Below, piece by piece: positions 18,046 through 63,689 of a stretch of DNA of 64,000 nucleotides. Numbering within the stretch: position 1 is the stretch's first letter; each line of letters starts with the position of its first letter. Under the pieces are notes generated by a model, which was not told the DNA's origin, did no database searches, and was given only the letters and a program-made list of their open reading frames with translations. The position numbers were made by a program, and so were the translations under genes. Source of the stretch: Podarcis muralis (taxonomy: Eukaryota). The stretch spans positions 78,182,001 to 78,246,000 of the forward strand of contig NC_135657.1 in the NCBI RefSeq assembly GCF_964188315.1. Reading direction: 5' to 3'.

Positions 18046-18417
18046 CAGTCTCAGCCTGAAGAGGAACACTCCTGTCACGTATTTAGAATATATGGCAACA
18101 TTTTGTTAGAGATCCTATTGGTGTGTTCTTCTCCTGAACTAGTTCAAAAATGGTCCAGCCTAAAAGAGCTGTTATGTGAAAAGCATTGTAATACAATTTC
18201 TGGTAGATATAGGAAGGACTATTAGCATCGTAGATGAAGCAACCTATACTTAGGAATGCTCAACAGCTGAATGCACAACCACCCCAGTTTTTGTATGTGG
18301 GTCCATGGAGAAAATACAGATCAAAAGCAAATTTACTACTATGGTAAAATAAAATAAAAATACAGGGAGTGTTGCAGCTTTCTGAATAGCCCAGACTATG
18401 AAAGAGCAAATTGATAT

Positions 18418-19174
18418 TGTCAGGGGTTCAGGAGCAGAGGGACAGGAGAGGGAGGAAGTAGAGACCGAGGGAGAGGAATCTGAGGGAGAAGTCAGCGAGG
18501 GTAGCCATCCGAGGTCTCTAAGTCTCTCCAGTGAATCAGAGGATTCACAGAAAGGGGCCCCAGTGGTCAGAGCCAGGGGGTTGCCAGAGGGAACACCCCA
18601 GGAAGGAGGGGCCAGAGGGGATTCAGAGAGCAGCAGCTGGAAATCGGGACCAACTTTCCCACCGGAGAGCAGTAAGGGGGAGGAGTCCCAAACATCGGCA
18701 GCAGGCAGCCTTCCGTCAGCGGAAGGACATGAGTCAGGGTTAGCCACGCCTGCATCAGAGAGCGAGGTAACGGTCAAAAGGAAGGTCAGGGGCAGCGCGC
18801 GCGCGCCAAGTTCAAATGTACAGGAGGGGGGCGCAATGGGCAGTCCGGAGAGAGAGCCGGGTCCCAAAGCCCGCCGGAGAGAAGGGGAGGAGTCCGAAGG
18901 GTCCGCTTCCGAGGCATCCCGGAAAGAAGGCACCCAGGGGGGTAGTAGGACCCAGAGGAGGAAGGAGAAACGTAGAAGGTGGAGTAAGGCTAGAGTCTTA
19001 AGCTGGTGTACAGGGGGCGGAGACTCAGACGAGGCTTCGCTGGTCTAGGGTTTAGACGTACAGACGCACGCTAGTGTTTGGAAATGGAAACTAAATGCCA
19101 ATAAAGACTTCTGTACAGTTCTAATGGCTAGCGTTGGTCTTCTGTGAGCTGAGACCGGGAGGCAGTCTCTGACA
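18418..19174 (+). repeat. 5' LTR (757 bp)
   Basis: Begins tgtcagggg, ends ctctgaca; matches 24205-24961 except C18524/T24311 and C19061/G24848 (by eye, supported by near-identical ORF translations in several frames). Confidence 0.98.
18996..19037 (+). promoter_or_regulatory. Predicted LTR core promoter and start of R
   Basis: TCTTAAG (TATA-like) about 28 nt upstream of 19027, the start site required by the self-priming model. Confidence 0.55.
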
Positions 19175-19176
19175 GT

Positions 19177-19187
19177 AAGCCTCGTCT
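19177..19187 (+). promoter_or_regulatory. Self-priming primer-binding site (no tRNA PBS)
   Basis: AAGCCTCGTCT, 2 nt after the 5' LTR, is the exact reverse complement of AGACGAGGCTT (19027-19037) in the LTR; no TGG-type tRNA PBS is present. Confidence 0.85.
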
Positions 19188-19286
19188 CACGTTATCATCG
19201 GTTTTCTTCGCCTCAAGCATCGCTAAGGAAGCGAGGCAGGGAGGGTGGAAGACTGGTGCCTTGCGAGCTCACAAGAGTCAGGCAAG

Positions 19287-20363
19287 ATGACTACAGAACA
19301 GAAAATAGCTTCCCTGCAAGAAGCGGTGACGCTACTCAACGCTGAAATAATCGCATCCAGGAAGAGAGAGGAAGAAGCGGCAGCTGCATGCAGAGATCTT
19401 CAAGCCAGGTTGGAAGGGCTTGTAAAGCAGGGGATCCCAGCACCCAGGTCCGAGGGGATCGGTTTGGGGAAGAGAGGAGGCAGCATTGTATCTCATTTTG
19501 ATGGGAATTTGCAGCAGTACCCCAATTTCAGAGCAGATGTGCTGTTTGCGCTGCAGCTGCTGGAAAGAGACTTTAGAGATGAGCGGGAAAAAGTGGGGTT
19601 TATTTTGTCTCATTTGCATGGGGACGCGAAATCATGGCTGCGCAACCTGTGGAGAGATCAGGATCCAGCGCTCCAAAGCGCAGATGCGTTCATTAAGGCG
19701 ATGGACTCCTGTTTCTTATCCAAAATAGACCTGGACATTGCCCGGAGGGACATATTTGGGCTAAGACAAGGGAAAGCCAGCGTAAGGCAGTATCATTCCC
19801 GGTTTTTTGCATTGGTCAACGCGCTGAATTGGGATAAGGATTCTCCGCCGGTTAGAGACCTTTTTTGGGAGGGTCTGAATGCACAGATCAAGGATGAGAT
19901 GGCAAGGGGAGAGAGACCCACCACCACTCAGCAAGTGGTTGAAAGAGCGTTGTCTATTGGGGTGAGGCAGGAAGAACGTCCGTGGAGCAAAGAAGAAGGG
20001 CGTTGGGGACGTTCACCAGCGAGAGTGCCCTCCCTCTTGCCCAGAGAGGCAGCGCGTGCGCAGTCCACGCCTCCACAGGGAGGGGGCGAGGAGCAGATGG
20101 AGATTGGCGGTGCTAGGGCTCACTCAGCTACCAGAGCCTTAACGCCAGGAGCAGTAAAATCGAAGCTGCCTAGAAGGAACAGGAAGTGTTATATATGTGA
20201 GAGTGCAGAGCACATGGCGAAAGAGTGTCCCCAGAGGAGTTTCAAGCACACTGCAGCTTCAGTGACAGTATTGGAAACAACTCAGCAGAGAGCACCACAG
20301 CAGGGAAACGACCAGGTCTGGCTGGAAGAGGAGGCACTGGGGCCCAGCCAGACGAGTCAGTGA
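19287..20363 (+). CDS. gag: Gag (358 aa from first ATG): coiled coil, retrotransposon capsid domain, CCHC zinc knuckle
   Basis: ATG with A at -3 (gcaagATG); FDGN...KVGFILSHLHGDAKSW capsid signature of sushi/PEG10-like Gags; CYICESAEHMAKEC = CX2CX4HX4C. Confidence 0.95.
   Translation: MTTEQKIASLQEAVTLLNAEIIASRKREEEAAAACRDLQARLEGLVKQGIPAPRSEGIGLGKRGGSIVSHFDGNLQQYPNFRADVLFALQLLERDFRDEREKVGFILSHLHGDAKSWLRNLWRDQDPALQSADAFIKAMDSCFLSKIDLDIARRDIFGLRQGKASVRQYHSRFFALVNALNWDKDSPPVRDLFWEGLNAQIKDEMARGERPTTTQQVVERALSIGVRQEERPWSKEEGRWGRSPARVPSLLPREAARAQSTPPQGGGEEQMEIGGARAHSATRALTPGAVKSKLPRRNRKCYICESAEHMAKECPQRSFKHTAASVTVLETTQQRAPQQGNDQVWLEEEALGPSQTSQ
20303..20362 (+). promoter_or_regulatory. -1 programmed ribosomal frameshift signal (G GGA AAC plus H-type pseudoknot)
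   Basis: Slippery heptamer 20303-20309 in the correct gag phase; 6-nt spacer; stem 1 GTCTGGCTGG (20316-20325) / CCAGCCAGAC (20344-20353); stem 2 CACTG (20335-20339) / CAGTG (20358-20362). Confidence 0.9.
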
Positions 20364-23300
20364 GGAAGTCCCCAGAGATTTTGCAGCCCACAGACCCCCT
20401 CCCGCCCAAGCCAGTGGTGCAGCTAACCGCATCGCTTCAGCTGCCCAATGGACTCACCTTAGAAGTGCCTATTACAATTGACTCTGGCAGTAACGCAGAC
20501 TTTATAGGATTGGAGTTCATTCAACAACACAACGTAGCATTACTGCCAGCCACACTGCCCCTGAAGGTTGTCACGGTGGATGGCAGGGAACTGCTAGGGG
20601 GGCAGGTGGTGCAGCAGACGCCGCCTATGGTGATGCAAATTGGGAATCACCGGGAAGTTATCAGTTTCAATGTCACCCAGCTGTCCGACACGCCTATAGT
20701 ATTAGGCATGAGTTGGCTGCACAGGCACAGCCCAGCATTGGCGTGGTACCAGCGCCACCTGACTTTTGGCTCCTCCTACTGTGCAGAACACTGCATTATA
20801 CCCAGCCCGGAAGGGGAAGAGGAGGACCCGCAGTTGCAGTTGGGCACGCTGCAAGCAGTACCCCACAAGTATGCGGAGTTTTTGGAGGTATTCTGCGAGA
20901 AGGAGGCGGACAAGCTACCCCCTCACAGACCCTATGATTGCAAGATTGACCTCCTGCCGGGGGCGACGCTGCCAACTGGGAAACTGTACTCCATGTCTGA
21001 GGATGAACTGCAAGAACTCAGGGAGTTCATAGATCACAATTTGAAGCGTGGGTTCATCCGGGAGTCGAAAGCGGTGGGAGGCAGTCCCGTATTCTTTGTG
21101 AAGAAGCGGGATACGCCCCAAAAAAGACTGGTGGTGGACTTCAGAATCTTGAATTCGAAAACCAAGCCCTCAGCTTTCCCCATGCCCAAGATAGACGACC
21201 TGCTAGCGACGGTGCGGAAAGGACGCGTTTTCACCAAGCTGGATCTACGTGGCGCGTACAACCTGATTCGCATGCGCGACGGAGACGAGTGGAAGACGGC
21301 CATGTTCACGCCACTGGGCACCTACGAATACAGAGTTATGCCCTTCGGATTACAAAATGGCTCTCACACTTTCCAAGCCTTTATGCATCACGTGCTGGCG
21401 GGGCTCCTTTACAAGAAGTGCGTATGCTTCCTGGACGACATCCTGATTTTTTCAGAATCGCGAGAGGCGCACGAGAGGGATGTCAGGGAAGTTCTGCAGA
21501 GACTGAAGGAGCACAGGCTGTACGCCAAACTGGAGAAGTGCCAGTTCGACGTGACGGGGGTGGATTTCCTGGGCTACAAGTTGTCGGACAAGGGGCTCGC
21601 CATGGACAGCGCCAAGGTTCGCGCAGTTTTGGACTGGAAGAGCCCACGCAATCGGAAGGAAGTCCAGCGGTTTGTCGGCTTTGCCAACTTTTACCGCAAG
21701 TTCATCAAGGGATTTGCCATGCAGACAGCGGCCATCACCGACACGCTCAGCTCCAAGAAGAAGAAATTCATCTGGACGGAGCAAGCGGAGCAGTCCTTTC
21801 AGAAACTCAAGCGTCTCTTCGCGTCCGAAGAGCAGCTGCTGCATGTGAATCCCAGCAGACCCATGAGGGTGGAGACGGACGCCTCAGACAGAGCCGTGGG
21901 AGCTGTCCTGTTGCAACAAGACCAGCAGGGGGACTGGAGGCCGTGCGCCTTCTACTCGAGGAAGCTCAGCAAGTCGGAGCAGAATTACACTATCTGGGAC
22001 AGGGAGTTGCTAGCCATACATGCAGCATTCAAGGCATGGAGGCACTTCCTCATCGGAGCCACACATACAGTGCAGGTCCACACGGACCACAAGAATCTGG
22101 AGTACTGGCGCACGGCTAGGTTCCTCAACCAGAGACACATTAGATGGGCAGAGTTCTTCGCGGACTTCGACTTCAAGATAGAGTACATCCCAGGCGACAA
22201 CAACGTGATGGCGGATGCATTGTCCAGAAAGCCGCAATACCTGGAGGAGGCGGCACCGTCGGCGGCCAAGCACATTTTCGCACCGGAAGCGTGGGCATGC
22301 GCGTCGGCAACCGTGGACCTGGACGCCGTACGTCGCGCGCTGCGGGAAGACCCCTTCGCACGGGCCAAGATGGAGGAGGTGCACAGGGGCACAGCGAGGG
22401 CCGACGAGTTCCAGATTCGCGATGGGTTGCTCCTCCACAAGGGAGCACTCTACGTGCCGGGAGATGACCTCCGCGCAAGGGTCCTGCAGCAGCTACACGA
22501 CGCTCCCACCGCAGGGCACTTTGGCAAAGAAAAGACTGTCGAACTCGTAGCCAGAGACTTTTGGTGGCCCAAGATGCGGGGGGAAGTAGCGGATTACGTC
22601 TCGAGATGTGACACCTGCCAAAGGGCCAAGTCAGTTCACAGACCGCCGGCGGGATTGCTGGAACCGCTGCAGACACCGTCTGAACCGTGGGAGAGGGTGG
22701 CCCTGGACTTCGTCACGGATCTGCCCAGCTCGAGGGGAAAGACAGCAGTGCTAGTGGTGGTGGACATGTTTACTAAGATGGCACACTTCATTCCGTGTGC
22801 GAAGGTAGCCACGGCAGAGCAGACCGCCAAACTGTTCATAGACCACGTGTTCAAGGTCCACGGTCTGCCACGGTCTATTCTTTCCGACCGGGGGCGACAG
22901 TTCATCTCGAACTTCTGGCAGAAGCTGATGGGCATTCTGAACGTCAAAGTCAATTTGGCGTCGGCGAGACACCCGCAGACCAACGGACAAGCGGAGAGGG
23001 TCAACGCCGTCATGCAGCAGTACCTAAGATGCTACGCCAACCAGCAGCCCACGACATGGGTGGACTACCTGCCGCTCGCCGAGTTCGCTTACAACAATAC
23101 GAAGCACGTGTCGACGGGGGTGACGCCGTTCTTCGCCAACAACGGGAGGCATCCCAGAACCTTCCCGGGTTTAGAGAGAGTGGGGGAGGGGGAGCCACAG
23201 GCAGCGGAGGCCTTAGCGTCGGAGTTGCAGGAGGTCCACGAACAGCTCAGGAGGCAGTTAGAACTAGCTAAGCACGCATACAAGGTGCAGGCCGACAGAC

Positions 23301-24835
23301 ACAGAAGAGTTGGGGAAGACATACAGGTGGGTGACTGGGTCTGGCTAGCAGCGCAAGCAGTGCCGACCAGATCATTAGCTAAGAAGAAGCTAGGACATAA
23401 GCAGCTAGGACCTTACCAAGTCCAGGCGCAGGTCAATCCAGTGGCCTTCCGGTTGGCTCTTCCGGAGGGTTCCAGAATGCATCCGGTGTTCCATAGATCG
23501 GTGCTCACGCCCTACAAAGCACCTCATAGGTTTCAGGAGCCAGACACCGCACCTGACCAGAGCAGTGAAGGGCCCAGAGTGCGGGGGCCGCCTAGGAAGG
23601 GACACATCAATGAGGTCACAGAGATTTTGGACTCCAGATGGGGGGAAGAGGGAGTAGAATATTTCCTAGCCAGAGAGGGTACCCCGGCCAGTGCCAACAG
23701 CTGGGTACCGGACTATGCCTTGGAGGAACCGCTGCTCAAAGAGGAGTTTCATGCCCTCTTCCCGCACAGGCCCATGCCAGCAGAGTATTTCGATGACTGG
23801 CTTTTCACACCCACTCTTTCAGCCAGCACATTCCTGGGGTTCGACTCGGACGAGGAACAGGCACCAGTCCCCAGCTCTCAGGTGGGTTCGCCACCGGGGT
23901 CTGCCTCAGACCACTCGTATTGGTGGGACGATCAACCAGAGGAGCAGTGGCGCAGGAAGTGGCTGAGGGGTCCTTGGATGGGACCACCCGAAGAGGGGGA
24001 GAGGGGCGAGACGGACATGGACGTGTTGGGGGACAACGTGGGGTTCGAGCATGAAGACAGAGAGATGGAAGCAGAGGAGAGCGACGTTGACGAGTACATG
24101 GGGGATGAACTGTATCCGGCAAGCACCCCCGCGACGACGGAGCACCCAGTACCCGCACCGGAAGGAGGGGAGGGGGGAAGGGGGGGCTTCGAGGGGGGGA
24201 TGGATGTCAGGGGTTCAGGAGCAGAGGGACAGGAGAGGGAGGAAGTAGAGACCGAGGGAGAGGAATCTGAGGGAGAAGTCAGCGAGGGTAGCCATCCGAG
24301 GTCTCTAAGTTTCTCCAGTGAATCAGAGGATTCACAGAAAGGGGCCCCAGTGGTCAGAGCCAGGGGGTTGCCAGAGGGAACACCCCAGGAAGGAGGGGCC
24401 AGAGGGGATTCAGAGAGCAGCAGCTGGAAATCGGGACCAACTTTCCCACCGGAGAGCAGTAAGGGGGAGGAGTCCCAAACATCGGCAGCAGGCAGCCTTC
24501 CGTCAGCGGAAGGACATGAGTCAGGGTTAGCCACGCCTGCATCAGAGAGCGAGGTAACGGTCAAAAGGAAGGTCAGGGGCAGCGCGCGCGCGCCAAGTTC
24601 AAATGTACAGGAGGGGGGCGCAATGGGCAGTCCGGAGAGAGAGCCGGGTCCCAAAGCCCGCCGGAGAGAAGGGGAGGAGTCCGAAGGGTCCGCTTCCGAG
24701 GCATCCCGGAAAGAAGGCACCCAGGGGGGTAGTAGGACCCAGAGGAGGAAGGAGAAACGTAGAAGGTGGAGTAAGGCTAGAGTCTTAAGCTGGTGTACAG
24801 GGGGCGGAGACTCAGACGAGGCTTCGCTGGTCTAG
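20303..24835 (+). CDS. pol: Pol (protease, RT, RNase H, integrase, chromodomain, long C-terminal tail), expressed as a Gag-Pol fusion of about 1850 aa by -1 frameshift
   Basis: ORF 20225-24835 is stop-free. PR DSG 20480-20488; RT FLDD 21428-21439; RH TDAS about 21875; IN HHCC 22496-22618; D22706, D22886, E22994 (D,D35E); GPY 23408-23416; chromodomain about 23606-23764. Confidence 0.97.
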   Translation, partial: GKRPGLAGRGGTGAQPDESVRKSPEILQPTDPLPPKPVVQLTASLQLPNGLTLEVPITIDSGSNADFIGLEFIQQHNVALLPATLPLKVVTVDGRELLGGQVVQQTPPMVMQIGNHREVISFNVTQLSDTPIVLGMSWLHRHSPALAWYQRHLTFGSSYCAEHCIIPSPEGEEEDPQLQLGTLQAVPHKYAEFLEVFCEKEADKLPPHRPYDCKIDLLPGATLPTGKLYSMSEDELQELREFIDHNLKRGFIRESKAVGGSPVFFVKKRDTPQKRLVVDFRILNSKTKPSAFPMPKIDDLLATVRKGRVFTKLDLRGAYNLIRMRDGDEWKTAMFTPLGTYEYRVMPFGLQNGSHTFQAFMHHVLAGLLYKKCVCFLDDILIFSESREAHERDVREVLQRLKEHRLYAKLEKCQFDVTGVDFLGYKLSDKGLAMDSAKVRAVLDWKSPRNRKEVQRFVGFANFYRKFIKGFAMQTAAITDTLSSKKKKFIWTEQAEQSFQKLKRLFASEEQLLHVNPSRPMRVETDASDRAVGAVLLQQDQQGDWRPCAFYSRKLSKSEQNYTIWDRELLAIHAAFKAWRHFLIGATHTVQVHTDHKNLEYWRTARFLNQRHIRWAEFFADFDFKIEYIPGDNNVMADALSRKPQYLEEAAPSAAKHIFAPEAWACASATVDLDAVRRALREDPFARAKMEEVHRGTARADEFQIRDGLLLHKGALYVPGDDLRARVLQQLHDAPTAGHFGKEKTVELVARDFWWPKMRGEVADYVSRCDTCQRAKSVHRPPAGLLEPLQTPSEPWERVALDFVTDLPSSRGKTAVLVVVDMFTKMAHFIPCAKVATAEQTAKLFIDHVFKVHGLPRSILSDRGRQFISNFWQKLMGILNVKVNLASARHPQTNGQAERVNAVMQQYLRCYANQQPTTWVDYLPLAEFAYNNTKHVSTGVTPFFANNGRHPRTFPGLERVGEGEPQAAEALASELQEVHEQLRRQLELAKHAYKVQADRHRRVGEDIQVGDWVWLAAQAVPTRSLAKKKLGHKQLGPYQVQAQVNPVAFRLALPEGSRMHPVFHRSVLTPYKAPHRFQEPDTAPDQSSEGPRVRGPPRKGHINEVTEILDSRWGEEGVEYFLAREGTPASANSWVPDYALEEPLLKEEFHALFPHRPMPAEYFDDWLFTPTLSASTFLGFDSDEEQAPVPSSQVGSPPGSASDHSYWWDDQPEEQWRRKWLRGPWMGPPEEGERGETDMDVLGDNVGFEHEDREMEAEESDVDEYMGDELYPASTPATTEHPVPAPEGGEGGRGGFEGGMDVRGSGAEGQEREEVETEGEESEGEVSEGSHPRSLSFSSESEDSQKGAPVVRARGLPEGTPQEGGARGDSESSSWKSGPTFPPESSKGEESQTSAAGSLPSAEGHESGLATPASESEVTVKRKVRGSARAPSSNVQEGGAMGSPEREPGPKARRREGEESEGSASEASRKEGTQGGSRTQRRKEKRRRWSKARVLSWCTGGGDSDEASLV
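24161..24204 (+). promoter_or_regulatory. Polypurine tract, lying inside the pol ORF
   Basis: gaaggaggggaggggggaagggggggcttcgagggggggatgga abuts the 3' LTR. Confidence 0.85.
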
Positions 24836-24961
24836 GGTTTAGACGTAGAGACGCACGCTAGTGTTTGGAAATGGAAACTAAATGCCAATAAAGACTTCTG
24901 TACAGTTCTAATGGCTAGCGTTGGTCTTCTGTGAGCTGAGACCGGGAGGCAGTCTCTGACA
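24205..24961 (+). repeat. 3' LTR (757 bp)
   Basis: Direct repeat of 18418-19174 at offset 5787; preceded by a polypurine tract, followed by TSD GATAT. Confidence 0.98.
24887..24892 (+). terminator. LTR polyadenylation signal AATAAA (5' LTR copy at 19100-19105)
   Basis: Hexamer about 70 nt from the LTR end, downstream of the pol stop codon. Confidence 0.8.
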
Positions 24962-28109: not shown

Positions 28110-29632
28110 CATTAGGAGACCTGCTAGTGACTGAAGGAAGGTTTCTAAAGCCAGAGACAGCTGCTGTGTTCCTGACTAAGCAAAATGGATGTACAATCAA
28201 CAATGAGCTTACTCCTGCATTTTTGAGTCAGACTTGCACTTTCCTTTATGTCATCTGAAACATGTACATAAAAGTAATTGGAATCTAACCTTTTGTCAGT
28301 GGTGGGAATAAAAAAATATGCAATTCAACAGCGTCTCTTCACTCAGCACTTCTTCTTGATTACCTTGCAGATGTTCCTGTCTGGTGTTGATGTGTGAGAG
28401 AGGCAGGGTAAGCAGTGTAAGCCACACACATAGGGTTCCTTGGTTGGATTATTTCTGCCATTTCCTTCCTGGCTAGGAAAACTGTATATACACGTAAACA
28501 CATAATTGCCAGGGAAGGGGTCGCTTTCCTGAGTTCTCCCTCTAAGCTACTAATCAATCACACACAGGAACCAAACCTGTTACCAGGCTTTGGTTACCAC
28601 CTGCCTGAGGGGCCACACCCAGCGATACTTGCTCACAGGATCAGTACTTCATGACAATAATATTCTCCTAGTTAAATTCCTGCCCTCTGACCACACAGTG
28701 CATATATGCCATTCTTCATCTTCTTTTGAATACACCAAGACATCACATTGAGAACAGCCATTTCTTCTTTCATTTTAAACTCTGCACAATGAAGGGGAAA
28801 ATGTGAGTGCTGATATAAATTATTTCACGCGGTTAGAATGTTCTTAGTTAGGCAGTCAGATAACATCATCATCAATATCATCATGTTTATGTTGCGTTTC
28901 CAAAGTATTCCACGTGGTGTGTGTTGTTTTTAAAATCTATGTTTATTTTTGTATTCCATCCCATAACATAAAGGTATTGGGGTGGCTTACAACAAATAAA
29001 TGAAATATAATTTTAATATAAATTAAAGATAAAACCATAAAATTAAACACTGCTTCTCACTTTCAGTCAAAAGTTACCTCAGTAAACCTTACCCTGCCCC
29101 CAAGAAAAACAACTTAAAACAACTTATGAGGTGAGCCACTATCATATCATACAGGAGTTTGGGTGGTGAGTAGGAACTTGAGAAGAAAGTGGCTTAATTA
29201 AGGCAGACACAGTAGCTTTGGGTACTTCAAGATGCACGGCTTGAACTCAAACAGGTCATTCAAATCTGGTGGGGGGGTTTTCATAGCATGTTTGGCACTT
29301 TAGCTTCCACGCATTCCTGCTTTCCCAGTCATTGATAATCATTGGTATTCAACTCACTCACCACCCATTCCATTGGAAAGAAGGGGCTTTGGTTGGGAGG
29401 AGGGGAGTTGTCCCTCCTTTCAGTCATGTCTCCTCCACTTGCCACCAAATTATTCCATTCAGGACATGCGTACAACTATCTCTGTGTGCACGCCTTAAAG
29501 TAATTTTAAAATCCTAGGATTTGTGAAAGGGCAAACGTTTACCCGCCTTACTTATCAGGTTTCACAATGGACAAAAATGGAAGCTTATGCTGTTTTGGTG
29601 CTGGGGTGGGCAGCATCCCTTTCCATTTAGAT

Positions 29633-29770: not shown

Positions 29771-31190
29771 ATTTAGATGATGTGTGCTTTTTTAAAATAG
29801 TGAGATCTTGTGCAAGAGTGATGTTTACCTGACTAAGGGATACACAAGAATGATTAAGACTTCTTGCACAATCACTCTGTATTAACTGATTCACTACCAA
29901 CTCTTAATAGCCACTATACCACACCTGAAGAATGTTTTGTAAATAATTAATCTAGCATCAAACAATAGAAACTCTCTCATCTCTCAATTTACCAGAAAGG
30001 GATTGCTTTCAGGCCCAACTTTACCATTAGGCAGAGTGTGGCAGCCATTTCCCGCAGCAGATTTTGGGAGTTCTGAAAGGGCAGTAAATTGTTACTTATT
30101 TAATTATGATTGTAAGCTATACTTCAGAGGGGAAACACTTGTGGGATTTTCTGCCTGGAGTGCCAAAGTAATTTGGCCAGCCTTGCATCCTGTACACCTT
30201 ACCTTGGGGGGAAATGGATGCTATTTGGTGCTATGCCTCAGAAGGAAACATGTCTTGGGTTTGGCCTGTTTTCTTTCCCTGGAAGTTATAAATACATTTT
30301 AGAGACTTCAGTGTCACTCCTTTCGTTTAAAACCTACATGCCTCACACTTCAGCTTCTCCAAAATGGTTGTGAAATTTATTCATGCATGAACCAGCAGCT
30401 GAATTTCTGTCATGTAATGTTCATGTATTCTATCATTTCCTTTACTTTCCTACAGAGGTTTCTTTTTCCCTGTCTCAGCTACAACTGTTAAAGCTACTTG
30501 CATTCTGCAGTGTTATTGGAACACCAGATTCTCTCTCTTTCATTTAAGGGCAAAGGAAGAGAAAAAAGCAAAGTGGGGAGTTTGTGTCCCTTGGTATTTT
30601 AGTCCGTACGCTAATAATTGTATCAGCAGGTTTATAAGCTGATGTTCTTTTAATTGTTTCACCCTCTCTCCTCATATGCATACGCTAATGGGCCCACTAC
30701 CTCTTATCCTTTCATATTTTTTTAATTGCTAATGGTTTATCCAGTAATATAAAATGACTGATGGCCACAGTCTGAAAAATATAGAAAAATCAATATGCAT
30801 CCAGACTCCATCTGTATAAGTAGAGAAGACAAGGAGCTGGCTTTGCAAGACAAAAGAAATCCTTTCATGGTTCTGCCGAAGTGTGCTAAAATACTGACCA
30901 ATTCCCACAGCTTAGAGAATGAAGGCATGGCAAAACAACATGGGCCGTGAGCACTCCCTTGTGCTCCAAGTAAGAGGCAAAGCCACTTCTTAGAGAGCAG
31001 GAGCAGAAGAGATCCATTTGCAATGATGCTCCTTGCCTTCTTATAGTCACCTGCTGGCCACCATGTGAAACAGGAATCTGGAGTAGATGGGCTTCTAGAT
31101 AGGGTCTGTTTATTTTCTTGTGTTTAAATCACACGGGCCTATGCAGGTCCACCCATATTTGCAATTCAACCTAATCAGCAAAATACGGTA

Positions 31191-31432
31191 CAGTGGTACT
31201 TCGGGTTAAGTACTTAATTCGTTCCGGAGGTCCGTTCTTAACCTGAAACTGTTCTTAACCTGAAGCACCACTTTAGCTAATGGGGCTTCCTGCTACCGCC
31301 GCGCTGCCGGAGCCCGATTTCTGTTCTTATCCTGAAGCAAAGTTCTTAACCTGAAGCACTATTTCTGGGTTAGCGGAGTATGTAACCTGAAGCGTATGCA
31401 ACCTGAAGCGTATGTAAACCGAGGTACCACTG
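31191..31432 (+). mobile_element. Tigger/pogo-type MITE
   Basis: CAGTGGTAC...GTACCACTG TIRs, TA TSD, internal taacctgaagc repeats. Confidence 0.92.
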
Positions 31433-33019
31433 TACTTCCTTTCACTAGGTTCTCTATTGTCCTTTCCTCTAGTCTGGTCCTGGGGTAAAATTGAGCCAGC
31501 AGCAATTTTAGACGTTTATGCCCATGCAGCAACAACCACAAGGTGTTAGGCGCATTTTGGAACATCAATAATCATGGAAGTTTCTGAAGTAAACTGTGTG
31601 AGTTTCTGGCTCACATTGCTCATGGGATGAGAAGGGGAGAGGAGGAGATAGTGAATTAAGAGGTGGAACTGGAAATGGGGCAACTCAAATGACATGGGGT
31701 TGTAATCTTTCAGGTGCCTCTAATGTCTAGAGCTCAGCAAGTAGTTCAAATTTGTAATGTAAGTATGTTTCTAAAATTCTAAGGCTGACTATATCCAGGC
31801 TTATTATAAAGACTTTTTTTTTTTTACTTCATCACACCTTTGAGTTATTTTTCAGCTGACTCTGCAGCTTGTTTTATTCTGTTTGGTTGTATGTTTTTAT
31901 TGCTATTTTAAGTCAGGGGGGTTATCATTGCTGTTGTTGTTAGTATTGTAAGCATTTTGTTAGTATTGCAAAGTATTTTGTTAGTATTGCAAACAAAATA
32001 AATAAATGATTCTACATTGACTATAGCTTAATAAAAATGTAACCCAAATAGGCTAGATCTGTTCTCCCAAAAAACAAAAGATCACGGTATCCTTAAATTA
32101 AAAAAGGTTTAATTTAAGCAGATAAAGCAGAGCAAGAGCTCATCCTCACTTCAACTTGTGCAGTGCCTATAAAACACTGTTCTGAGCAGTTTTCTGCTTG
32201 ACTCACACTTTTTAGGCTTGGATCCAAGCGGTTTACCACTTGCCCTACTCCTTCCCAGGGGAAAACCCACTCTTTAGCAATAGATTGGAAGAAATGGCAA
32301 TCCAAGGAAGACCTGAATTGCCATTTGCTCCAGTGGTTTTCCTCAGGTTGGGGGAGGGGCAGAGGGACGAGAGGAAGTCTGGATAAGTCCAACAAATTCA
32401 TTCTTTCCAAATTTAGCTATAGAAATGTGGGTCAAGTTACTTAATCTTCCTTGCAAGGTGGACAACCAGTGCCACTGTGGATCACCTTTTTGGGTTACAA
32501 CGACTGTGATGGTGCCACTCCCTTTCGCTGTTTGTTTTTATTGATATTTGGATGGGGGGATTGTGGGTGCTTCCTGGCGAGAGCAGGGAGCTTTGGGAGA
32601 CAGTAAAATTTTCTTACACCTTTTACCGTGACGTTTATGTTAGGGAGACAGCAGAAGTGAGAGTGCTGCTTCTACCTATAAATACATGCCTGTATATTTG
32701 GTGGGTGGGACTGTCTGCCTCTGCTGCATTTTTGTATTTTGGATCTGCTAGTAGTTATTGTTGGAATAGGCTACAGCCTTTAATTAACACCCACTGTCTT
32801 TAGAAGAAAAAGCTACTAAGGGTATAGTCCCCATATGTTAACTGTTTCAGTTTACACTGATGTTTAAGAGGGTATATTATTTAATTGTTATCTGTGCTGC
32901 TCTAAAAAGTGGACTTTTTACTTTACTTTTGTATTTGACTTTTAAAAGTAGCATTTTAGAATGCTGTAAATGGCTTAGAGATTTTCATTGAAATATGAAG
33001 CTATATATATACATTTTGG

Positions 33020-33829: not shown

Positions 33830-34180
33830 GGCAATCTCTGTCCCAGGAAGGCTTGTACACCTGATCCCTTTGTTGAGGCTTCTCTTCTAATTCCCGTCCC
33901 CCAGCTGGAAAGTCACAAACAGAGACACACAGAGAAAAGTCATAAGACCTATCTTGAAACATTTTTTTCTGTGAATTAATTTTTTTTGAAACTAGTTTCC
34001 TAGGCAATCTCTGTCCCAGGGAGGCTTGTACACCTGATCCCTTTGTTAAGGCTTCTCTTCTAATTCCCGTCCCCCAGCTGGAAAGTCACAGACAGAGACA
34101 CACAAAGAAGAGTCATAAGACCTATCTTGAAACATTTTTTTCTGTGAATTAATTTTTTTTGAAACTAGTTTCCTAGGCAA
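33830..34180. repeat. Tandem duplication, 173-bp unit x2
   Basis: 33830-34002 and 34003-34175, about 5 substitutions, GGCAA microhomology at the junctions. Confidence 0.95.
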
Positions 34181-34372
34181 CTTCTCTTCCACCCCTGTCT
34201 GCTGTAGTTCCCCTCCTTCTCCATCCAAGGATCTGTCCTTTTTCAGTCCTCGTCACCTTTAAACACCCAGCTCAACAAATTCTTACCCAAGTAAGAACTT
34301 TTTCCTCCTGGGAATCTCACTTGAAGAGTCCTTTCCCTGCTTGCACCACTTCATGATGAGAATGCATCAATA

Positions 34373-34611
34373 CAGTGGTACCTCAGGTTAAGTACTTAAT
34401 TCGTTCCGGAGGTCCGTACTTAACCTGAAACTGTTCTTAACCTGAAGCACCACTTTAGCTAATGGGGGCTGCTGCTGCTGCGCCGCCGGAGCACGATTTC
34501 TGTTCTCATCCTGAAGCAAAGTTCTTAACCTGAAGCACTATTTCTGGGTTAGCGGAGTCTGTAACCTGAAGCATATGTAACCTGAAGTGTCTGTAACCTG
34601 AGGTACCACTG
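34373..34611 (+). mobile_element. Tigger/pogo-type MITE (same family as 31191)
   Basis: CAGTGGTACCTCAGGTTA TIR, TA TSD, near-identical to the 31191 copy. Confidence 0.92.
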
Positions 34612-35081
34612 TACTGGGATGGGGAACTTCTGGCTCCAGATGTTGCTGGACTTTGGCTCCCATCATCCCTCACAATGAGCTGGGCCAGCTAGGACAATAG
34701 GGATTCATGTATGACTACATCTGGAGGGCCACACTAGTTCGCCATCTTTGCATTAAACATGATCATTTTTGTATTTTATTGTAAGCTACTCACAGCATAA
34801 TTATATGGACATGTTTATTCAGAAGGAAGCCACACCGTCCTCAATGTGGCTTACTCCCAAGTGGGTTTACATAGGATTGCAGCTGTAGACTGTATACACA
34901 CGTAGCATTTGAAATGCACAGGGGTCAGTTTTTTCACAGTACATAATAGTTTTCTTCATGCACTAACATCATCTAAAGTGCCAGCTAATATCCATGTTGT
35001 CTGTAGGTGGCCATGTTTTCAAATCAGTGTGCTATCTACTCCCTGTCCTTCAATTACTGTTTCCGCAGACCATTTTTTAAA

Positions 35082-36801: not shown

Positions 36802-38874
36802 TCATCAGTAGATGTCCGGGAAAATCCGGACACATGGCAAGCCATGCCAGCAGTGTCGTTTTTGCTGGTTTTCCTTAAAAATAGCTCAAAAACTGCAAGA
36901 ACTTTGCCAAAAACACTCAACAACTTTTGTGTCCAGATTTCCACTTTTTGAAATATGGCAACCCTAGTGTTGGAGGCAGTATGCCTTTGAATCACATGTG
37001 TTGTTGCACTCAGGTCCTGCTTCTGAGCTTGCATCTGATTAGCCACTGTGAGAATAGGATGCTGGACAAGACAAGCATTTGGTCTGATCCAGCAGGGCTC
37101 TTTTCATGTTCATACATGGTAGTTTGGTGCACCCAGGGATGCATGTCTGGAGCAATGGCTGGGAACATGTGGCCCTCCGGATGTTGCTGGGCTACAGTTC
37201 CAATCAACCCTTACCACTGGGAATGCAGTCTGGGGCTGATGGGATTGCAGTGTAACAACAGCTGAATGGCTTATCCCTGATCTGGAGGCTAGGAGCAGGT
37301 TCAGTGGATGTGGTCTTTCTCTATCAGTATAGATAAATACCTAGAGGAATGACTGAACAGAGCTAGTTAAGCTACTGGCTACACTACGTCTTGAATTCTG
37401 AATGTTTATTGCGCATTGTGTAAAATATATGCTTTCTTTTCCTGTCCTCGTTCACATGTTTGCAATGCTTCATCTGGGTTTCTTGGTCAGAGGGGAAGCT
37501 CGGTGGAAATCTAAGAACATGATCAATCCAAGAAAGATGCTGAAAGAGTCGTGGGAGGTGAAGGGACCCAGAGTAAAAGATAAACAGGTTCTGCGTTAGC
37601 TCCAAATAATTCTCAGTCTAGACTTCGGACAAAAAGTCTGCCTCTCTGTTTTTAATTCCTTCTGCTGGAAAGAAAAGTGCTGGAAATTGGTTCTTCCTCC
37701 TGCTGTATGTTGAACACTGACTCAGGAATGAATGCCCTTCAGCTATCCAGGAACTGCCAACTGAGGCCTTCAAAAGAGACTCACATGGCCAAGCTTGAAC
37801 AAGGGAATTTCAGTCTGAACTTGGCCCCACCGAATGCAGTGGTTGAAAGGCCCCCTGAGGTTGCAACAGTGCTGTAGTAATCCGAGTAAACAGGGACATT
37901 TTTCCCCCACCCCTAACTTTCCTCCAGTTAAACAGAACTCGCTTACGCATCCAGTCGTTTAGGCCCAGTCATGATTCTTTTCAAGCAGCTGCCAACAGTT
38001 TTTAGTCATCTTCTGGCAAAGTGTTTTTAACCACAAATGTTACATAGCTGCTGGATGAGTCATTGCTTTGAGTTATCTAATTCCTAGACCAGTGCATGCT
38101 TGCTTTTTCCTGCAGTTCAGGAAAATTCAAATATCGTAGAGGGTGCTGAGCAGAGCTCACTGCTTGGAAAGACAGGAGCGCTCGGAGTCACTCTTGTCTC
38201 CAAGACAGGGATCCTTGAGGAATTTGATCTTTGTGAAATGCACACCTCCTGATTGATTGTGTAGATTGAGACATTATCCTTTGGAATTCATACTTTTCTG
38301 AAATTTGTGATACGGTTCTCAGCTCAAAAGAATAGCAAAAAATAATCTTTTAGGATAAAATATATTTAGAAATGTTGCATTTTAAATACATATTTGAAAC
38401 ATTTTTATATTTTAATTTCCATCCATTTTTTAAATTACATATTTATTTTATTTAACAGGATTTATATAGCACTTAATCATCAATAACCTCTAAGCAGTTT
38501 ACATGGAATACACATTAATGTTGGAATGGACTTATAAATGGATACGTGAAACTGACATGAACCCGGTAATAGATTAACCCATCCATCTCAAGTTTGAGAA
38601 AACCTTGTTAAGATGTTTAAGACAAACAAGTAGCTCCAAGTCATGCTCCTGGACTGCAGACCTGCACAGTGCACATGGTTGGTTTGCTGCTAGTTACAGG
38701 CATCAATAATACCTTTAAGATGTTTCCAGACAATGCAGTGACTTGTGCATAGGCTCCTGTATCTGAAAAAGAGGCCCTGCTTTGTTCTCTGGGATTTTCT
38801 GTTTCTTGAGCACAAAGGCAAGCTGTGTATAGATTGACTAGTTGGGTTTATCAAGTGATAGTTTGCCACACTGT

Positions 38875-39471
38875 TGTCAGGGTGGGTGTCAGGAGCAGGT
38901 CAGCAATAACAACTCACATGGTGGCAGTGAAATTAACTCTCTTTATTCAAAGAAACAAGACAGCTCAGTAGGCCAGGCCAAGTGAACACAGTAACTGTTC
39001 CTGGTAGATCTTGTGCCAATGAGGCAGATGTGAGGACTGAAGGTCCTCACCTTCCCGCAGCTCTCTAAGTCCTTCCCAAGCAACCTGAGACGCCTTTGTC
39101 TTGCCTCTTTTTGTTCTGCCCGCTTCATACCTCTTTGGGTTCTGGGAGACCAGGATGGAGGGCAGCTGCCTGTTGCAGGAGGGGGAGGCAGCCTGATTTC
39201 CTCACCAGCCTGACCCATCTCTGCCACTTGACCCCCCTCTTCTCCAGCCTCCGCTTCTGTTTCTGATTCTGGACTGCTCTCTGCCGCAGCCTCTTCCTGT
39301 TCACTAAATCCTGTTGCCTCTTTAGTTCCTGACACCTCCTCCTACCAGACTTCTCCTTCTGACCATGCACCGTTGTCCCACCACTAATCCCTGGGCTCTG
39401 AGCCTTCTTCCCTTGGGGGTTCCCCAGCTGGTGCCTCCCACCACTCCTCTAAATCCAGCCAGACCATGACA
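38875..39471 (-). mobile_element. Solo LTR (597 bp) of a second Gypsy-like family
   Basis: TGTCA...TGACA termini; perfect 5-bp TSD ACTGT (38870-38874, 39472-39476); minus-strand AATAAA at 38942-38947; purine-rich U3 with a decayed acidic/basic ORF. Confidence 0.9.
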
Positions 39472-41243
39472 ACTGTGCATGTAACCAGCTGATTGGCTGG
39501 CCATCTATATCAGCCTGCCAAAACACTTCTGTATCAGAAATCTGGGAACCAGAGGAATAGTAGAATTCTCATCATTTGGCCAAATAATACAGGAGACTAG
39601 CTTATCACATGGTTACATGCTCAGTTGTGCAATGCATAACCACTTAGTAAATGGCTGTCTGTATTCACCCAGTGAGACTGAAAATTCCAAAAAGGAGAAA
39701 CACCCACAGAACCTGTTACTCTGATGCATCCATGCACTGTGATTTCACAACAGTCCTGAGCAGATGGTCATTGAATGCACAAATAAATAAGTGAGAGGTG
39801 AGACTGGTATCATGTCAATTGGCCCTGCTTTCAGTCTCCATGTTTTCAATGTGTCATTTGCACAGAAATGTGCCAGCATCACCATAGTGTATGTAGGTCC
39901 ATACACACAATTTGTCCCCTTCATTTTTTTCAGAGTACAGAGTGCACCTAGAGACCCTATACTCTAGAACATATACTCTTTGGGGAGTACTTGCATTTGC
40001 TGTCCATGTATATACAGTACAGGGGTTTCTCCACCCTCATGGAGAAGTATACTACCTTTTTTTTTAAGGGCAAACATTTGCACAGGCTACCTTGCCACCA
40101 AAATAGTACATTCAAACTAAACCTATACTGTATCTGTTTACAGGGATGTAAGTCCCACTGAGTTCCATCAAACACTTCCATTTAAGTTTCAGCCTAAAAC
40201 ATATCAGTTAGTCTGCTTAACCTTTTTGTGTTTGGCCTTCGAAAGTACTGTAGAATCAAAAGCAAAATATAAGATCAGCAGTGATGAGTGCATATATTAT
40301 GTTTTGCGGTATTTCAGTTTTATTTTGTGGCTTTCAGTTGTTAGAGTTCTTAGTTACAGAAGTATTACTTCTTTGGCTGTCTAGATCACAGTGGATGAGT
40401 AGTATGATTTAAAAAGTATAACATTGGGTTAGGTGACAGCTTTCACTCAACTCATATCTGTCAACCCATGGGTATGTAAATATAGAGTTATGTGTAACTC
40501 ACAAGCCTGCATTCGGGGCCCACCCAATATGTTTTGCTCCTGCCACCTCTGTGGGTGTGTCCTAACCTCTGCCATAGTTGTGCCATGCCACCACCGCCAT
40601 GGCTATGCCTTGGGCATGTCCCTTCCCCTTCCTACATTTTGACATGCTTATCTCATTCAGCCAGCTGATAAACAATCTACTAAACCAGGGTAGGTAACCT
40701 TCACCACATGGCCAGTCCTGGCCTGCCAGGAGTTCCAATTTTACCTGTGATGCCATTAAAAAAAACAACACCCACCTGACAATCAGGTGACATAACATCA
40801 ATGGACAGGTGATTTCAATTTGATGGGCAGGTTTGTGGGCATGGTGAAGTGAAGTTTGTGGGCATGGTGGTTCCCTGCACCCAGCAGAATTAAACATCCC
40901 CGCCTCCCATCAGCTGATGGACAGGGAGAGGGTCAATTCTGCTTGCTTCGACTTCACACACAGTCCTGTGGGGAATAGTCGATTCCTGCAGAAAGCAGTT
41001 CAGTTCTGCTTGGTTTGGCTGCGTGCACAGAGAATTTGCACATACAGTCAATCCCTTCACCTAGCAGGAATGACTTCATCCACCCATCCATTAGCTGATG
41101 GATAAAGAGTTCAATTCTGCTATCAATCTTGCCTACCTGTCAAAGTTGGCCCATGCAGGTGGCAGGTAAATAAAGATCTGGCCCATGGGGCCTAAAAAGT
41201 TCCCCATCCCTGTACTACAGTATACAGTCAGGATAACTGTAAG

Positions 41244-61830: not shown

Positions 61831-62671
61831 CTTTGGTGCACTTGATGGACTTGGAGCCAGATCTAGCAGGTTCTTCTGTTTTTATCCTCAGAAATATGAA
61901 GCATGGTCCAAATTAAGTTATGGACATGTAGGTCTGATTAACTTTGATAGGTGAGATAATGCATTTGGGAATGTTTGATTTATGAAATAAACATTTAAAT
62001 ACAACCCACAGGGGGGAAAAATGTCAAAACAACAAGGCTGCTCCCTGTTCCATCAGTTACTCAGGGTTCAAATTCGTTTTCCTGGCTCAATGCTGCTTTT
62101 TAATGTGTGCATTATGAGGTTGTTTTCTGCTTGCTATCAATAAATCCCACATCCACTCTCCATTAAGAGGTGTTGGAGAGTTACTTTCCTGCATTTCACA
62201 GTATGTTGCGATAATGAGCACAATTAGTGATGGCTATTTTCATTTCATATATTTATTGCTTTGTTTGGCTAGGGTGAGATTCATATGCCAATATTGCAAT
62301 ATCTTGAAAGAAAGTTCAAGGAACATTAAAGAGATAAGTGAGAAATCAACAGATCAATGAATCAAGCATGAATGAGTGCTCTCTCTCATTGAATCACAGA
62401 GGGATAGTGTAATTAGTGTGTAGCAGCAAATACAATATTGCAACATTGTAAAGACTAAGAGGGATAATGTGCTTAAATGTATATAGATTAGGGTTCATCA
62501 AACACATGGAGTATTATCCTCAAGTTGGCAGACAGATATATGCATGTATCTCTTATATATATGTATGGTGTACACACAAACACATACAGATATACATACA
62601 CCTAGAGATGAAATGAAAAAGAGAAAAGAAAAGGTGTAGGTCATGAAATGTAGGAAGTCCACTGGCCAATA

Positions 62672-62913
62672 CAGTGGTACCTTGGGTTACATATGCTTCA
62701 GGTTACATACGCTTCAGGTTACAGACTCCGCTAACCCAGAAGTAGTACCTCGGGTTAAGAACTTTGCTTCAGGTTGAGAACAGAAATCGTGCTCCAGCGG
62801 CGCGGCAGCAGCAGAAGGCCCCATTAGCTAAAGTGGTGCTTCAGGTAAAGAACAGTTTCAGGTTAAGGACGGACCTCTAGAACGAATTAAGTATTTAACC
62901 CGAGATACCACTA
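62672..62913 (-). mobile_element. Tigger/pogo-type MITE (same family, opposite orientation)
   Basis: Reverse complement of the 31191 and 34373 copies; TA flanks. Confidence 0.9.
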
Positions 62914-63689
62914 TATGTGTTTGTTACCTTTCTATGTAAAGCTTACACAAATACAGCATAAGAAACGACCTATTCAAGACAGCGGCAATTGGTGCTGCTA
63001 TCTGGGTAGCAAACTATGGTCAGCTAATTTAACAGCTGCAGGGAGGCATTCCTTCTGCGGTGCATGGGTCACTTCTGATCTTACATGCTTTTGAACTTTG
63101 AATAGTAATAGCCTTTTGGTCTTATTCTTTTCATTCCTCCCTCCCTTATTCTACTTGTAAGCTGCCCGGAGGACTTTGCATTATGGTGCTGGGTTGTAGA
63201 GGCTGCCCTGGGGTGCCTTTGTGTCATACCTGGAAAACTTTGGCAAAAGCCCTTGCAATTATGGCAAAATGTGGAAAAGGAGGATGTCATTACACAGTGC
63301 AGGATGTAAAATACCTGGGCTTTTTGTTTTGTTTTGTTTTGTTTTTTTAAAAGGAGGGAAAGTTGAGGTATAAAGCCAGGACAATGGAAAGGCTTGCAAA
63401 AATAAAATCAAGCCAATACTAAGTTAAACAATTTACTGCCCCAGTGACCACCATGTAAGGTGTGGGGGCTGTAGTTGTTAGAACCTGGATCTCTCTCTCT
63501 GATGCCACCACAGCTCCAGAGGCAGCAGATGTATGTTCCTCCTGTTATCAATGCAGTATATTATTTATACCAATTTACTTGTTTATTTTATTTTTTATTA
63601 AGTTTATATACTTCCCTTCATCCCAAGATCACAGGGTGGTTTACAATATAAAAGCTATTTAATGTTACACACACACAAATACACACACA

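What the first reader, a model, noticed from the sequence alone, without database searches (positions are those of the whole stretch)
38875..39471. Unrelated solo LTR keeps the same U3 coding logic in the same phase
Seen: reading the minus strand from the LTR's second base (T|GTC, the same phase as GAT|GTC at the intact element's PPT/LTR junction) gives 176 codons with only two TAG stops: VMVWLDLEEWWEAP...D*WWDNGAWSEGEVW*EEVSGTKEATGFSEQEE...(E-rich)...SPRTQRGMKRAEQKEARQRRLRLLGK. This parallels the intact tail's YWWDDQPEEQW, acidic tract and SRTQRRKEKRRRWSKARVL, although I see no obvious nucleotide similarity between the LTRs. The WW block is inside this LTR but upstream of the PPT in the intact element, so the LTR boundary appears to have shifted relative to the tail. 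Inference: independent support that the U3-encoded tail is a selected, family-spanning feature.
Basis: partly seen in the sequence, partly recalled or inferred. Interest (0 to 1): 0.75.

Follow-up and report, generated by a model that had tools for sequence, protein, structure and literature searches.

The report
Solo LTR with possible pol-tail relic
A leftover end of a jumping gene (a solo LTR) in a lizard genome reads in one frame like the acidic-then-basic protein tail that other jumping genes here encode inside their LTRs. The likeness is only in composition and layout, so it is weak, not independent, evidence.

Summary
The sequence facts hold. Positions 38875-39471 (minus strand) are a true solo LTR: 597 bp, TGTCA...TGACA ends, 5-bp target duplication ACAGT, AATAAA 67 nt from the end.

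The statistics are marginal:
- Stop depletion p~0.09.
- 132-codon open run p~0.015.
- 3-base periodicity p~0.09.

The claimed parallels (WW block, RTQR-basic) are not above chance by BLASTP, profile-profile comparison, or motif HMMs scanned across the window. Only the layout matches: acidic first, basic at the end, and only in this phase.

Six short ORFs from other lizard DNA (two are Podarcis lilfordi gene models sharing one exon) match the same frame. The second TAG aligns with a Glu there. Three of these copies shift frame, and none bridges into pol.

A second Podarcis family (P0011/P0012) supports the "family-spanning" idea better than this LTR does. The scan had already noted pol-into-U3 elsewhere in this genome.

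The parts
38875..39471 (-). Solo LTR, 597 bp, TGTCA...TGACA terminal inverted repeat (called family C here)
   Evidence: Read directly and checked by script. It is the only copy in the window.
39472..39476 (-). Target-site duplication ACAGT, upstream copy
   Evidence: the upstream flank ends ...ACAGT.
38870..38874 (-). Target-site duplication ACAGT, downstream copy
   Evidence: the downstream flank starts ACAGT...
38946..39470 (-). The 175-codon frame that starts at LTR base 2, the same phase as pol at the intact element's PPT/LTR junction. It is broken by two TAGs.
   Evidence: Translation. Stop statistics. Periodicity.
39384..39386 (-). In-frame TAG, codon 29 (D*WWDN)
   Evidence: No homologous copy covers this position.
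39342..39344 (-). In-frame TAG, codon 43 (VW*EE)
   Evidence: It aligns with Glu in the Podarcis lilfordi ORF P0005.
39376..39445 (-). W-rich block. The two copies of the 10-mer AGTGGTGGGA (39436-39445 and 39376-39385) give both WW pairs.
   Evidence: The YWWD-block HMM scores it 1.0 bit, which is background level.
39198..39341 (-). Acidic core (codons 44-91, EEVSG...QAGEE). This is the part shared in the same frame with the ORFs from other lizards.
   Evidence: Net charge is -4 to -7 per 20 residues, and only in this phase. Periodicity of the acidic-plus-basic block (codons 44-143) is p=0.04.
39072..39149 (-). Basic cluster SPRTQRGMKR...RQRRLRLLGK (codons 108-133)
   Evidence: It is conserved as PRTRRG.KR...RLLG in P0001 and P0002. 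Both of those ORFs stop about 10 codons later.
38942..38947 (-). AATAAA polyadenylation signal, 67 nt before the LTR end. It holds the frame's TAA.
   Evidence: The intact LTR has AATAAA 69 nt before its end.
18418..24961 (+). Comparator: intact Ty3/Gypsy element (family A). LTRs lie at 18418-19174 and 24205-24961 with 2 mismatches, the TSD is GATAT, and pol 20225-24835 runs 210 codons into the 3' LTR.

Best explanation
This is an old solo LTR of a lizard LTR-retrotransposon family (family C). Family C is distinct at nucleotide level from the intact Gypsy element 14 kb away. The solo LTR was left when the two LTRs of an inserted copy recombined.

Its U3 is purine-rich with GAR codons held in one phase. 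Most likely it is the decayed remnant of a pol (integrase) C-terminal tail that, in the active ancestor, was read through the polypurine tract into the 3' LTR. Families A and B of the same genus do this. That tail would have had a W/acidic start, a long acidic run, a basic patch (PRTQRG.KR...RLLG) and a stop before the poly(A) signal.

In this copy nothing is expressed as protein. There is no upstream pol, and two TAGs break the frame.

Shown: the solo-LTR anatomy, the phase, the near-open frame, the charge layout, and homologous open frames in other lizards. Inferred: that pol of this family entered the LTR in this frame.
For: - Solo-LTR anatomy with a TSD.
- It shares several features with the intact element, whose pol does enter the LTR: the same 5-nt termini, a 5-bp TSD, similar AATAAA spacing, and the same phase.
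- The 132-codon open run has p=0.015 in the pre-set frame.
- Codon periodicity is p=0.02-0.04 in the W block and the acidic/basic block. The truly coding family A LTR tail itself reaches only p=0.014.
- The acidic-then-basic charge profile appears only in this phase and mirrors families A and B.
- The all-library HMMER search and the profile word search found six ORFs called in this same frame on other lizard DNA, 55-79% identical. These are P0001, P0002, P0004 and P0063, plus the P. lilfordi models P0005 and P0062, which share one exon.
- The second TAG aligns with Glu in P0005.
- P0001 and P0002 stop at the same place after RLLG.
- A and B tails, both read from intact pols, are also not alignable with each other. 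Missing homology therefore does not speak against coding.
- Earlier scan notes report several pol-into-U3 families in this genome.
Against: - Stop depletion is weak (p=0.09), and the other sense frames have nearly as few stops.
- Purine-rich LTRs keep long frames open by composition alone. The family A LTR has a 262-aa antisense ORF.
- There is no sequence or motif similarity to A/B tails above background. After bias correction the proposed phase scores lowest against the A+B tail HMM.
- P0001, P0004 and P0005 change frame relative to the solo LTR at about LTR positions 140, 346 and 274.
- The homologous ORFs were found because they are ORFs in this frame, which is ascertainment bias. No control search of the other frames was possible.
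- No long pol protein among 1.84 billion cluster representatives carries this tail. No ORF bridges the LTR's 5' edge.
Confidence: 0.55

Rival explanations
1. The open frame is a by-product of composition. The U3 is a purine-rich, GA-repeat-like promoter/enhancer region that never encoded protein. The phase match, the E-rich reading and the basic patch are coincidences picked out after the fact.
For: - Stops p=0.09, with the other sense frames at 4-5 stops over the same span.
- Whole-frame periodicity p=0.09.
- The motif HMMs and hhalign are at background level.
- The WW pairs arise from one repeated 10-mer, as enhancer repeats would.
- Frameshifts occur among the copies.
- A long antisense ORF in the family A LTR shows that such DNA stays open by chance.
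Against: - The 132-codon run has p=0.015 in a frame fixed beforehand by the intact element.
- GAR codons stay in phase over about 50 codons, with in-frame indels only, in P0002 and over long stretches of the other ORFs.
- The charge layout matches two families that do encode such tails.
- The prior is high in this genome.
Confidence: 0.35
2. The frame is a separate LTR-borne accessory gene (a 'U3 protein' starting at the ATG at LTR bases 5-7), not a pol tail.
For: - An ATG is the second codon of the frame.
- The gene callers gave the related ORFs their own starts.
Against: - U3 is transcribed only as the 3' end of the element's RNA. A separate gene would need its own message or reinitiation.
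- The called starts differ between copies and fall inside the acidic run.
- An earlier scan note on another family resolved a similar 'U3 protein' as the end of gag-pol (not tested here).
Confidence: 0.04
3. The LTR fragment has been taken up as a host exon, and its frame is kept for a host protein.
For: Two P. lilfordi gene models (P0005, P0062) share an exon made of this LTR region, each with a different first exon.
Against: - Both are unnamed 'hypothetical predicted' models of about 100 aa with no Pfam domain.
- Their frame leaves the solo LTR's frame after 59 codons.
- The window copy has two stops and a TSD, like a plain insertion.
Confidence: 0.03

Closest known systems
Family A: the intact Ty3/Gypsy element in this window (18418-24961) and its Podarcis muralis relatives P0006-P0010
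   Same: - TGTCA...TGACA LTR ends and a 5-bp TSD.
- AATAAA 67-69 nt before the LTR end.
- A frame starting at LTR base 2.
- An acidic run followed by a basic patch before the stop.
   Different: - No nucleotide or protein similarity.
- The LTR is 597 bp against 757 bp.
- The frame is broken here by two TAGs.
- No linked pol is known for this family.
Family B: Podarcis muralis chromodomain Gypsy pols P0011/P0012
   Same: Pol reads through a PPT-like GGGEGGPGG and a DVR start into a 116-aa acidic-then-basic tail. Its tail is likewise not alignable with family A's.
   Different: - Only the protein is available, so its LTR boundary is inferred from the peptide.
- It has no similarity to the solo LTR's reading.
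Plant CRM (centromeric retrotransposon) group A chromoviruses
   Same: [quoted passage not shown] 2011, PMC3059260, read).
   Different: - These are plant elements with TGATG/CATCA-type ends.
- The LTR-encoded part is a defined motif and is shorter.
- No relation to the lizard tails was tested or is claimed.

Membership tests
Solo LTR of an LTR retrotransposon | TG...CA ends forming a short terminal inverted repeat | tested here: met
   TGTCA...TGACA
Solo LTR of an LTR retrotransposon | Direct target-site duplication flanking a single LTR, with no internal region nearby | tested here: met
   ACAGT on both sides. There is no second copy and no other Gypsy pol fragment in the window.
Solo LTR of an LTR retrotransposon | Poly(A) signal near the 3' part (R/U5) | tested here: met
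   AATAAA at 38942-38947, 67 nt before the end
Solo LTR of an LTR retrotransposon | Dispersed related copies elsewhere | tested here: met
   Six ORFs from other lizard DNA match it, 55-79% identical, including P. lilfordi CAI5775004.1. This was seen at protein level only.
Lizard Gypsy families whose pol tail is encoded in U3 (families A and B) | Pol ORF continuous through the PPT into the 3' LTR of a full-length member | not testable with these tools
Lizard Gypsy families whose pol tail is encoded in U3 (families A and B) | Frame begins at LTR base 2 (xxT|GTC) | tested here: met
Lizard Gypsy families whose pol tail is encoded in U3 (families A and B) | Frame open from the LTR start to a stop upstream of AATAAA | tested here: not met
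   Two in-frame TAGs, and the frame then runs into AATAAA itself. Relatives P0001 and P0002 stop about 95 nt earlier.
Lizard Gypsy families whose pol tail is encoded in U3 (families A and B) | Sequence or motif similarity of the tail (FxGF, YWWD, RR..RRR.S...L.W) | tested here: not met
   Families A and B also fail this test against each other over most of the tail.
Lizard Gypsy families whose pol tail is encoded in U3 (families A and B) | Acidic N-terminal part and basic patch near the C-terminus | tested here: met
   Charge profiles, seen in phase 1 only
Lizard Gypsy families whose pol tail is encoded in U3 (families A and B) | Purifying selection on the frame (codon-position bias in divergence) | not testable with these tools
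   No DNA of other family C copies was available. The periodicity test is only marginal.
Plant CRM group A chromoviruses | CR motif encoded in the 3' LTR, with RT phylogeny inside the CRM clade | not tested
   This is an analogy from the literature only. No pol is known for family C.

The most novel reading that the evidence does not exclude
Several lacertid Gypsy-type families whose LTRs share no detectable sequence each keep U3 as dual-use DNA: a promoter that is also read, in the same phase from LTR base 2, as an acidic, W-bearing integrase tail ending in a basic patch. On this reading the layout, not the sequence, is what selection holds, and this solo LTR is a fossil of a third such family.
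Probability: 0.35. Interest if true: 0.6.

Novelty: new member of a known kind. Interest (0 to 1): 0.3.

Why it matters
If family C really encoded a pol tail in U3, there would be three LTR families with unalignable LTRs that share one coding layout. That would argue that the integrase tail has a function, such as targeting, nuclear import or chromatin binding. It would also argue that promoter and coding constraints can coexist in U3 of animal elements, something documented so far mainly for plant centromeric retrotransposons. As it stands, this LTR is an ordinary decayed solo LTR and adds only weak weight. The intact families A and B are the better material for that question.

Tried and rejected
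- **Nucleotide search of the solo LTR.** Searched against the window and the whole intact element; only the LTR's self-match came back.
- **BLASTP of the frame's pieces against the family A tail.** Best E-values were 0.44 and 7.4.
- **hhalign of the family C alignment against the A+B LTR-coded tails.** The result is no better than column shuffles.
- **HMMs of the FxGF, YWWD and basic-end blocks over six frames of the window.** The solo LTR scores at background level.
- **A+B tail HMM against all frames of the LTR.** No signal in the proposed phase.
- **R/U5 global alignment with the family A LTR.** p=0.21.
- **Pfam scan of the frame and of the related ORFs.** Nothing found.
- **ESM Atlas.** No hit. 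The genuine family A tail is equally unrecognised, so this test has no power.
- **Scans of metagenome, viral and prokaryote genome contigs for family C.** All empty.
- So read laying was not used, and no DNA of other copies could be read.
- **P0003, a tandem-repeat protein hit.** Judged irrelevant.
- **The 'shifted LTR boundary' idea.** Rejected as unsupported, because the WW match it rests on is not above chance.

Full report
**What is there**

On the minus strand, 39471->38875 is a 597-bp LTR. It starts TGTCATGG, ends CCCTGACA, and is flanked on both sides by ACAGT. The window holds no second copy of it and no Gypsy pol fragment outside the intact element. It is therefore a true solo LTR with a 5-bp target duplication. 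AATAAA lies at 38942-38947, 67 nt before the LTR end.

**The comparator**

- The intact element spans 18418-24961. Its 757-bp LTRs differ at 2 positions, and its TSD is GATAT.
- It encodes gag and a 1536-codon pol with protease, RT, RNase H, integrase and Tf2-type SH3 domains.
- Pol runs through the polypurine tract and 210 codons into the 3' LTR.
- The LTR's first T (24205) is the third base of a GAT codon, so a codon starts at LTR base 2.
- Its LTR also begins TGTCA, ends TGACA, and has AATAAA 69 nt before its end.

**The observation**

TAG falls at codons 29 and 43, and TAA, inside AATAAA, falls at codon 176. No nucleotide similarity links the solo LTR to the intact LTR or to any other part of that element. 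These statements are confirmed.

**Is it more than chance?**

| Test (dinucleotide-preserving shuffles) | Result |
|---|---|
| Stops in the pre-set frame | 3 observed, 6.4 expected, p=0.09 |
| Stops in the other two sense frames, same span | 5 and 4 |
| 132-codon open run, pre-set frame | p=0.015 |
| 132-codon open run, any sense frame | p=0.04 |
| 3-base periodicity, whole frame | p=0.09 |
| 3-base periodicity, W block / acidic+basic block | p=0.02 / 0.04 |
| 3-base periodicity, family A LTR tail (truly coding) | p=0.014 |

The periodicity test is weak, because even the truly coding family A tail reaches only p=0.014. Composition alone can keep such DNA open: the family A LTR carries a 262-codon antisense ORF.

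**The claimed parallels**

- BLASTP of the pieces against the 356-aa family A tail gives E=0.44 at best.
- I built alignments of the tails of families A and B and of the solo LTR's relatives. hhalign scores 11.9, against 10.9+-1.9 for column-shuffled controls.
- I ran HMMs of the FxGF, YWWD and basic-end blocks over all six frames of the window. The solo LTR's WWDN scores 1.0 bit, fifth of about 410 hits. Its GFSE and RTQR sites do not reach the top twelve for their blocks.
- Against an HMM of the A+B tails, the proposed phase scores lowest after bias correction.
- Both WW pairs come from one 10-mer repeated 60 nt apart.

The WW and RTQR matches are therefore not evidence of homology, and the 'shifted LTR boundary' idea has nothing to stand on. 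What does match is layout. In this phase alone the reading is acidic (-4 to -7 per 20 residues) for about 90 codons and then basic (+3 to +6). Families A and B show the same pattern.

**Relatives of the solo LTR**

- An all-library HMMER search with the 132-codon open piece found four short ORFs, 55-62% identical. It found no long pol protein.
- A profile search added two more ORFs.
- Two of the six are Podarcis lilfordi gene models sharing one LTR-derived exon. The others sit on ENA contigs of 3-4 kb and on a 1-kb Logan contig.
- All six match the same frame over the acidic core.
- The solo LTR's second TAG aligns with a Glu in P0005. P0001 and P0002 keep PRTRRG.KR...RLLG and both stop about ten codons later.
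- Against this, P0001, P0004 and P0005 change frame relative to the solo LTR near LTR positions 140, 346 and 274.
- None of the six extends upstream into pol.
- These ORFs could only be found because they are open in this frame. I had no search left for a control with the other frames.

**A better witness for 'family-spanning'**

A search with the intact integrase region found Podarcis muralis pols of the same family (P0006-P0010, 82-95% identical). It also found a second family (P0011/P0012, about 50% identical, with a Pfam Chromo domain).

- Family B reads GGGEGGPGG-EVDVRE..., which is a PPT followed by a TGTCAGG-type LTR start. It continues for 116 residues, acidic and then basic, ending RRESRRRVSVKELLCW next to family A's KEKRRRWSKARVLSWC.
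- Apart from that short end, the A and B LTR-coded tails are not alignable by BLASTP. Lack of homology therefore cannot be held against the solo LTR.
- Within family A, P0007 is 68% identical to the intact copy over the LTR-coded tail. It has no indel and the same end, which fits a maintained frame.
- Earlier notes of this scan had already reported pol-into-U3 for this element and for others in this genome. I confirmed it for this window. The other notes I used only as leads.

**Reading**

The most likely account (about 0.55) is this. The solo LTR is a fossil of a third family whose pol tail was encoded in U3. It has since decayed and is not expressed, since there is no pol upstream and two TAGs break the frame. 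The main rival (about 0.35) is that a purine-rich U3 reads this way by chance.

**What could not be done**

- That step is referred.

**Known precedent and scores**

This finding is a new member of a known kind. As independent evidence it is weak, and I score its interest at 0.3.

Noticed in passing
window 23932-24720 (-), and 18250-18933 (-) in the 5' LTR: The intact element's LTR carries an antisense ORF of 262 aa (227 aa in the 5' copy), as long as the sense pol tail. Composition alone can keep long frames open in these LTRs, or the LTR may be read on both strands.
   Followed up: no
P0011 and P0012 (Podarcis muralis proteins; no locus available): A second Gypsy family with a Pfam Chromo domain whose pol reads through a PPT-like GGGEGGPGG and a DVR LTR-type start into a 116-aa acidic-then-basic tail. 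Its end, RRESRRRVSVKELLCW, resembles family A's RRRWSKARVLSWC.
   Followed up: partly
P0005 and P0062 (Podarcis lilfordi, CAI5775004.1 and an isoform): Two predicted gene models share an exon made of a family C LTR fragment, each with a different first exon. This is either exonisation or an annotation artefact.
   Followed up: partly
window 38964-39023 (-), the R region of the solo LTR: The reading ...RSTRNSYCVHLAWPTE... weakly matches a 372-aa protein built of six 65-aa tandem units (P0003, source unknown), at about 23% identity. This is probably chance, or possibly an LTR-derived satellite elsewhere.
   Followed up: partly
window 39376-39385 and 39436-39445 (-): The 10-mer AGTGGTGGGA occurs twice, 60 nt apart, in U3. 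The 8-mer TGGTGGGA also occurs in the intact tail at 23921, at 28300 (+), and at 55722 and 55843 (-). It could be a repeated regulatory site.
   Followed up: no
window 33830-34175; 31189-31436, 34370-34617 and 62666-62916: A 173-bp tandem duplication, and a dispersed repeat of about 250 bp in direct and inverted copies (89-91% identical). These are probably SINE-like or MITE-like elements.
   Followed up: no
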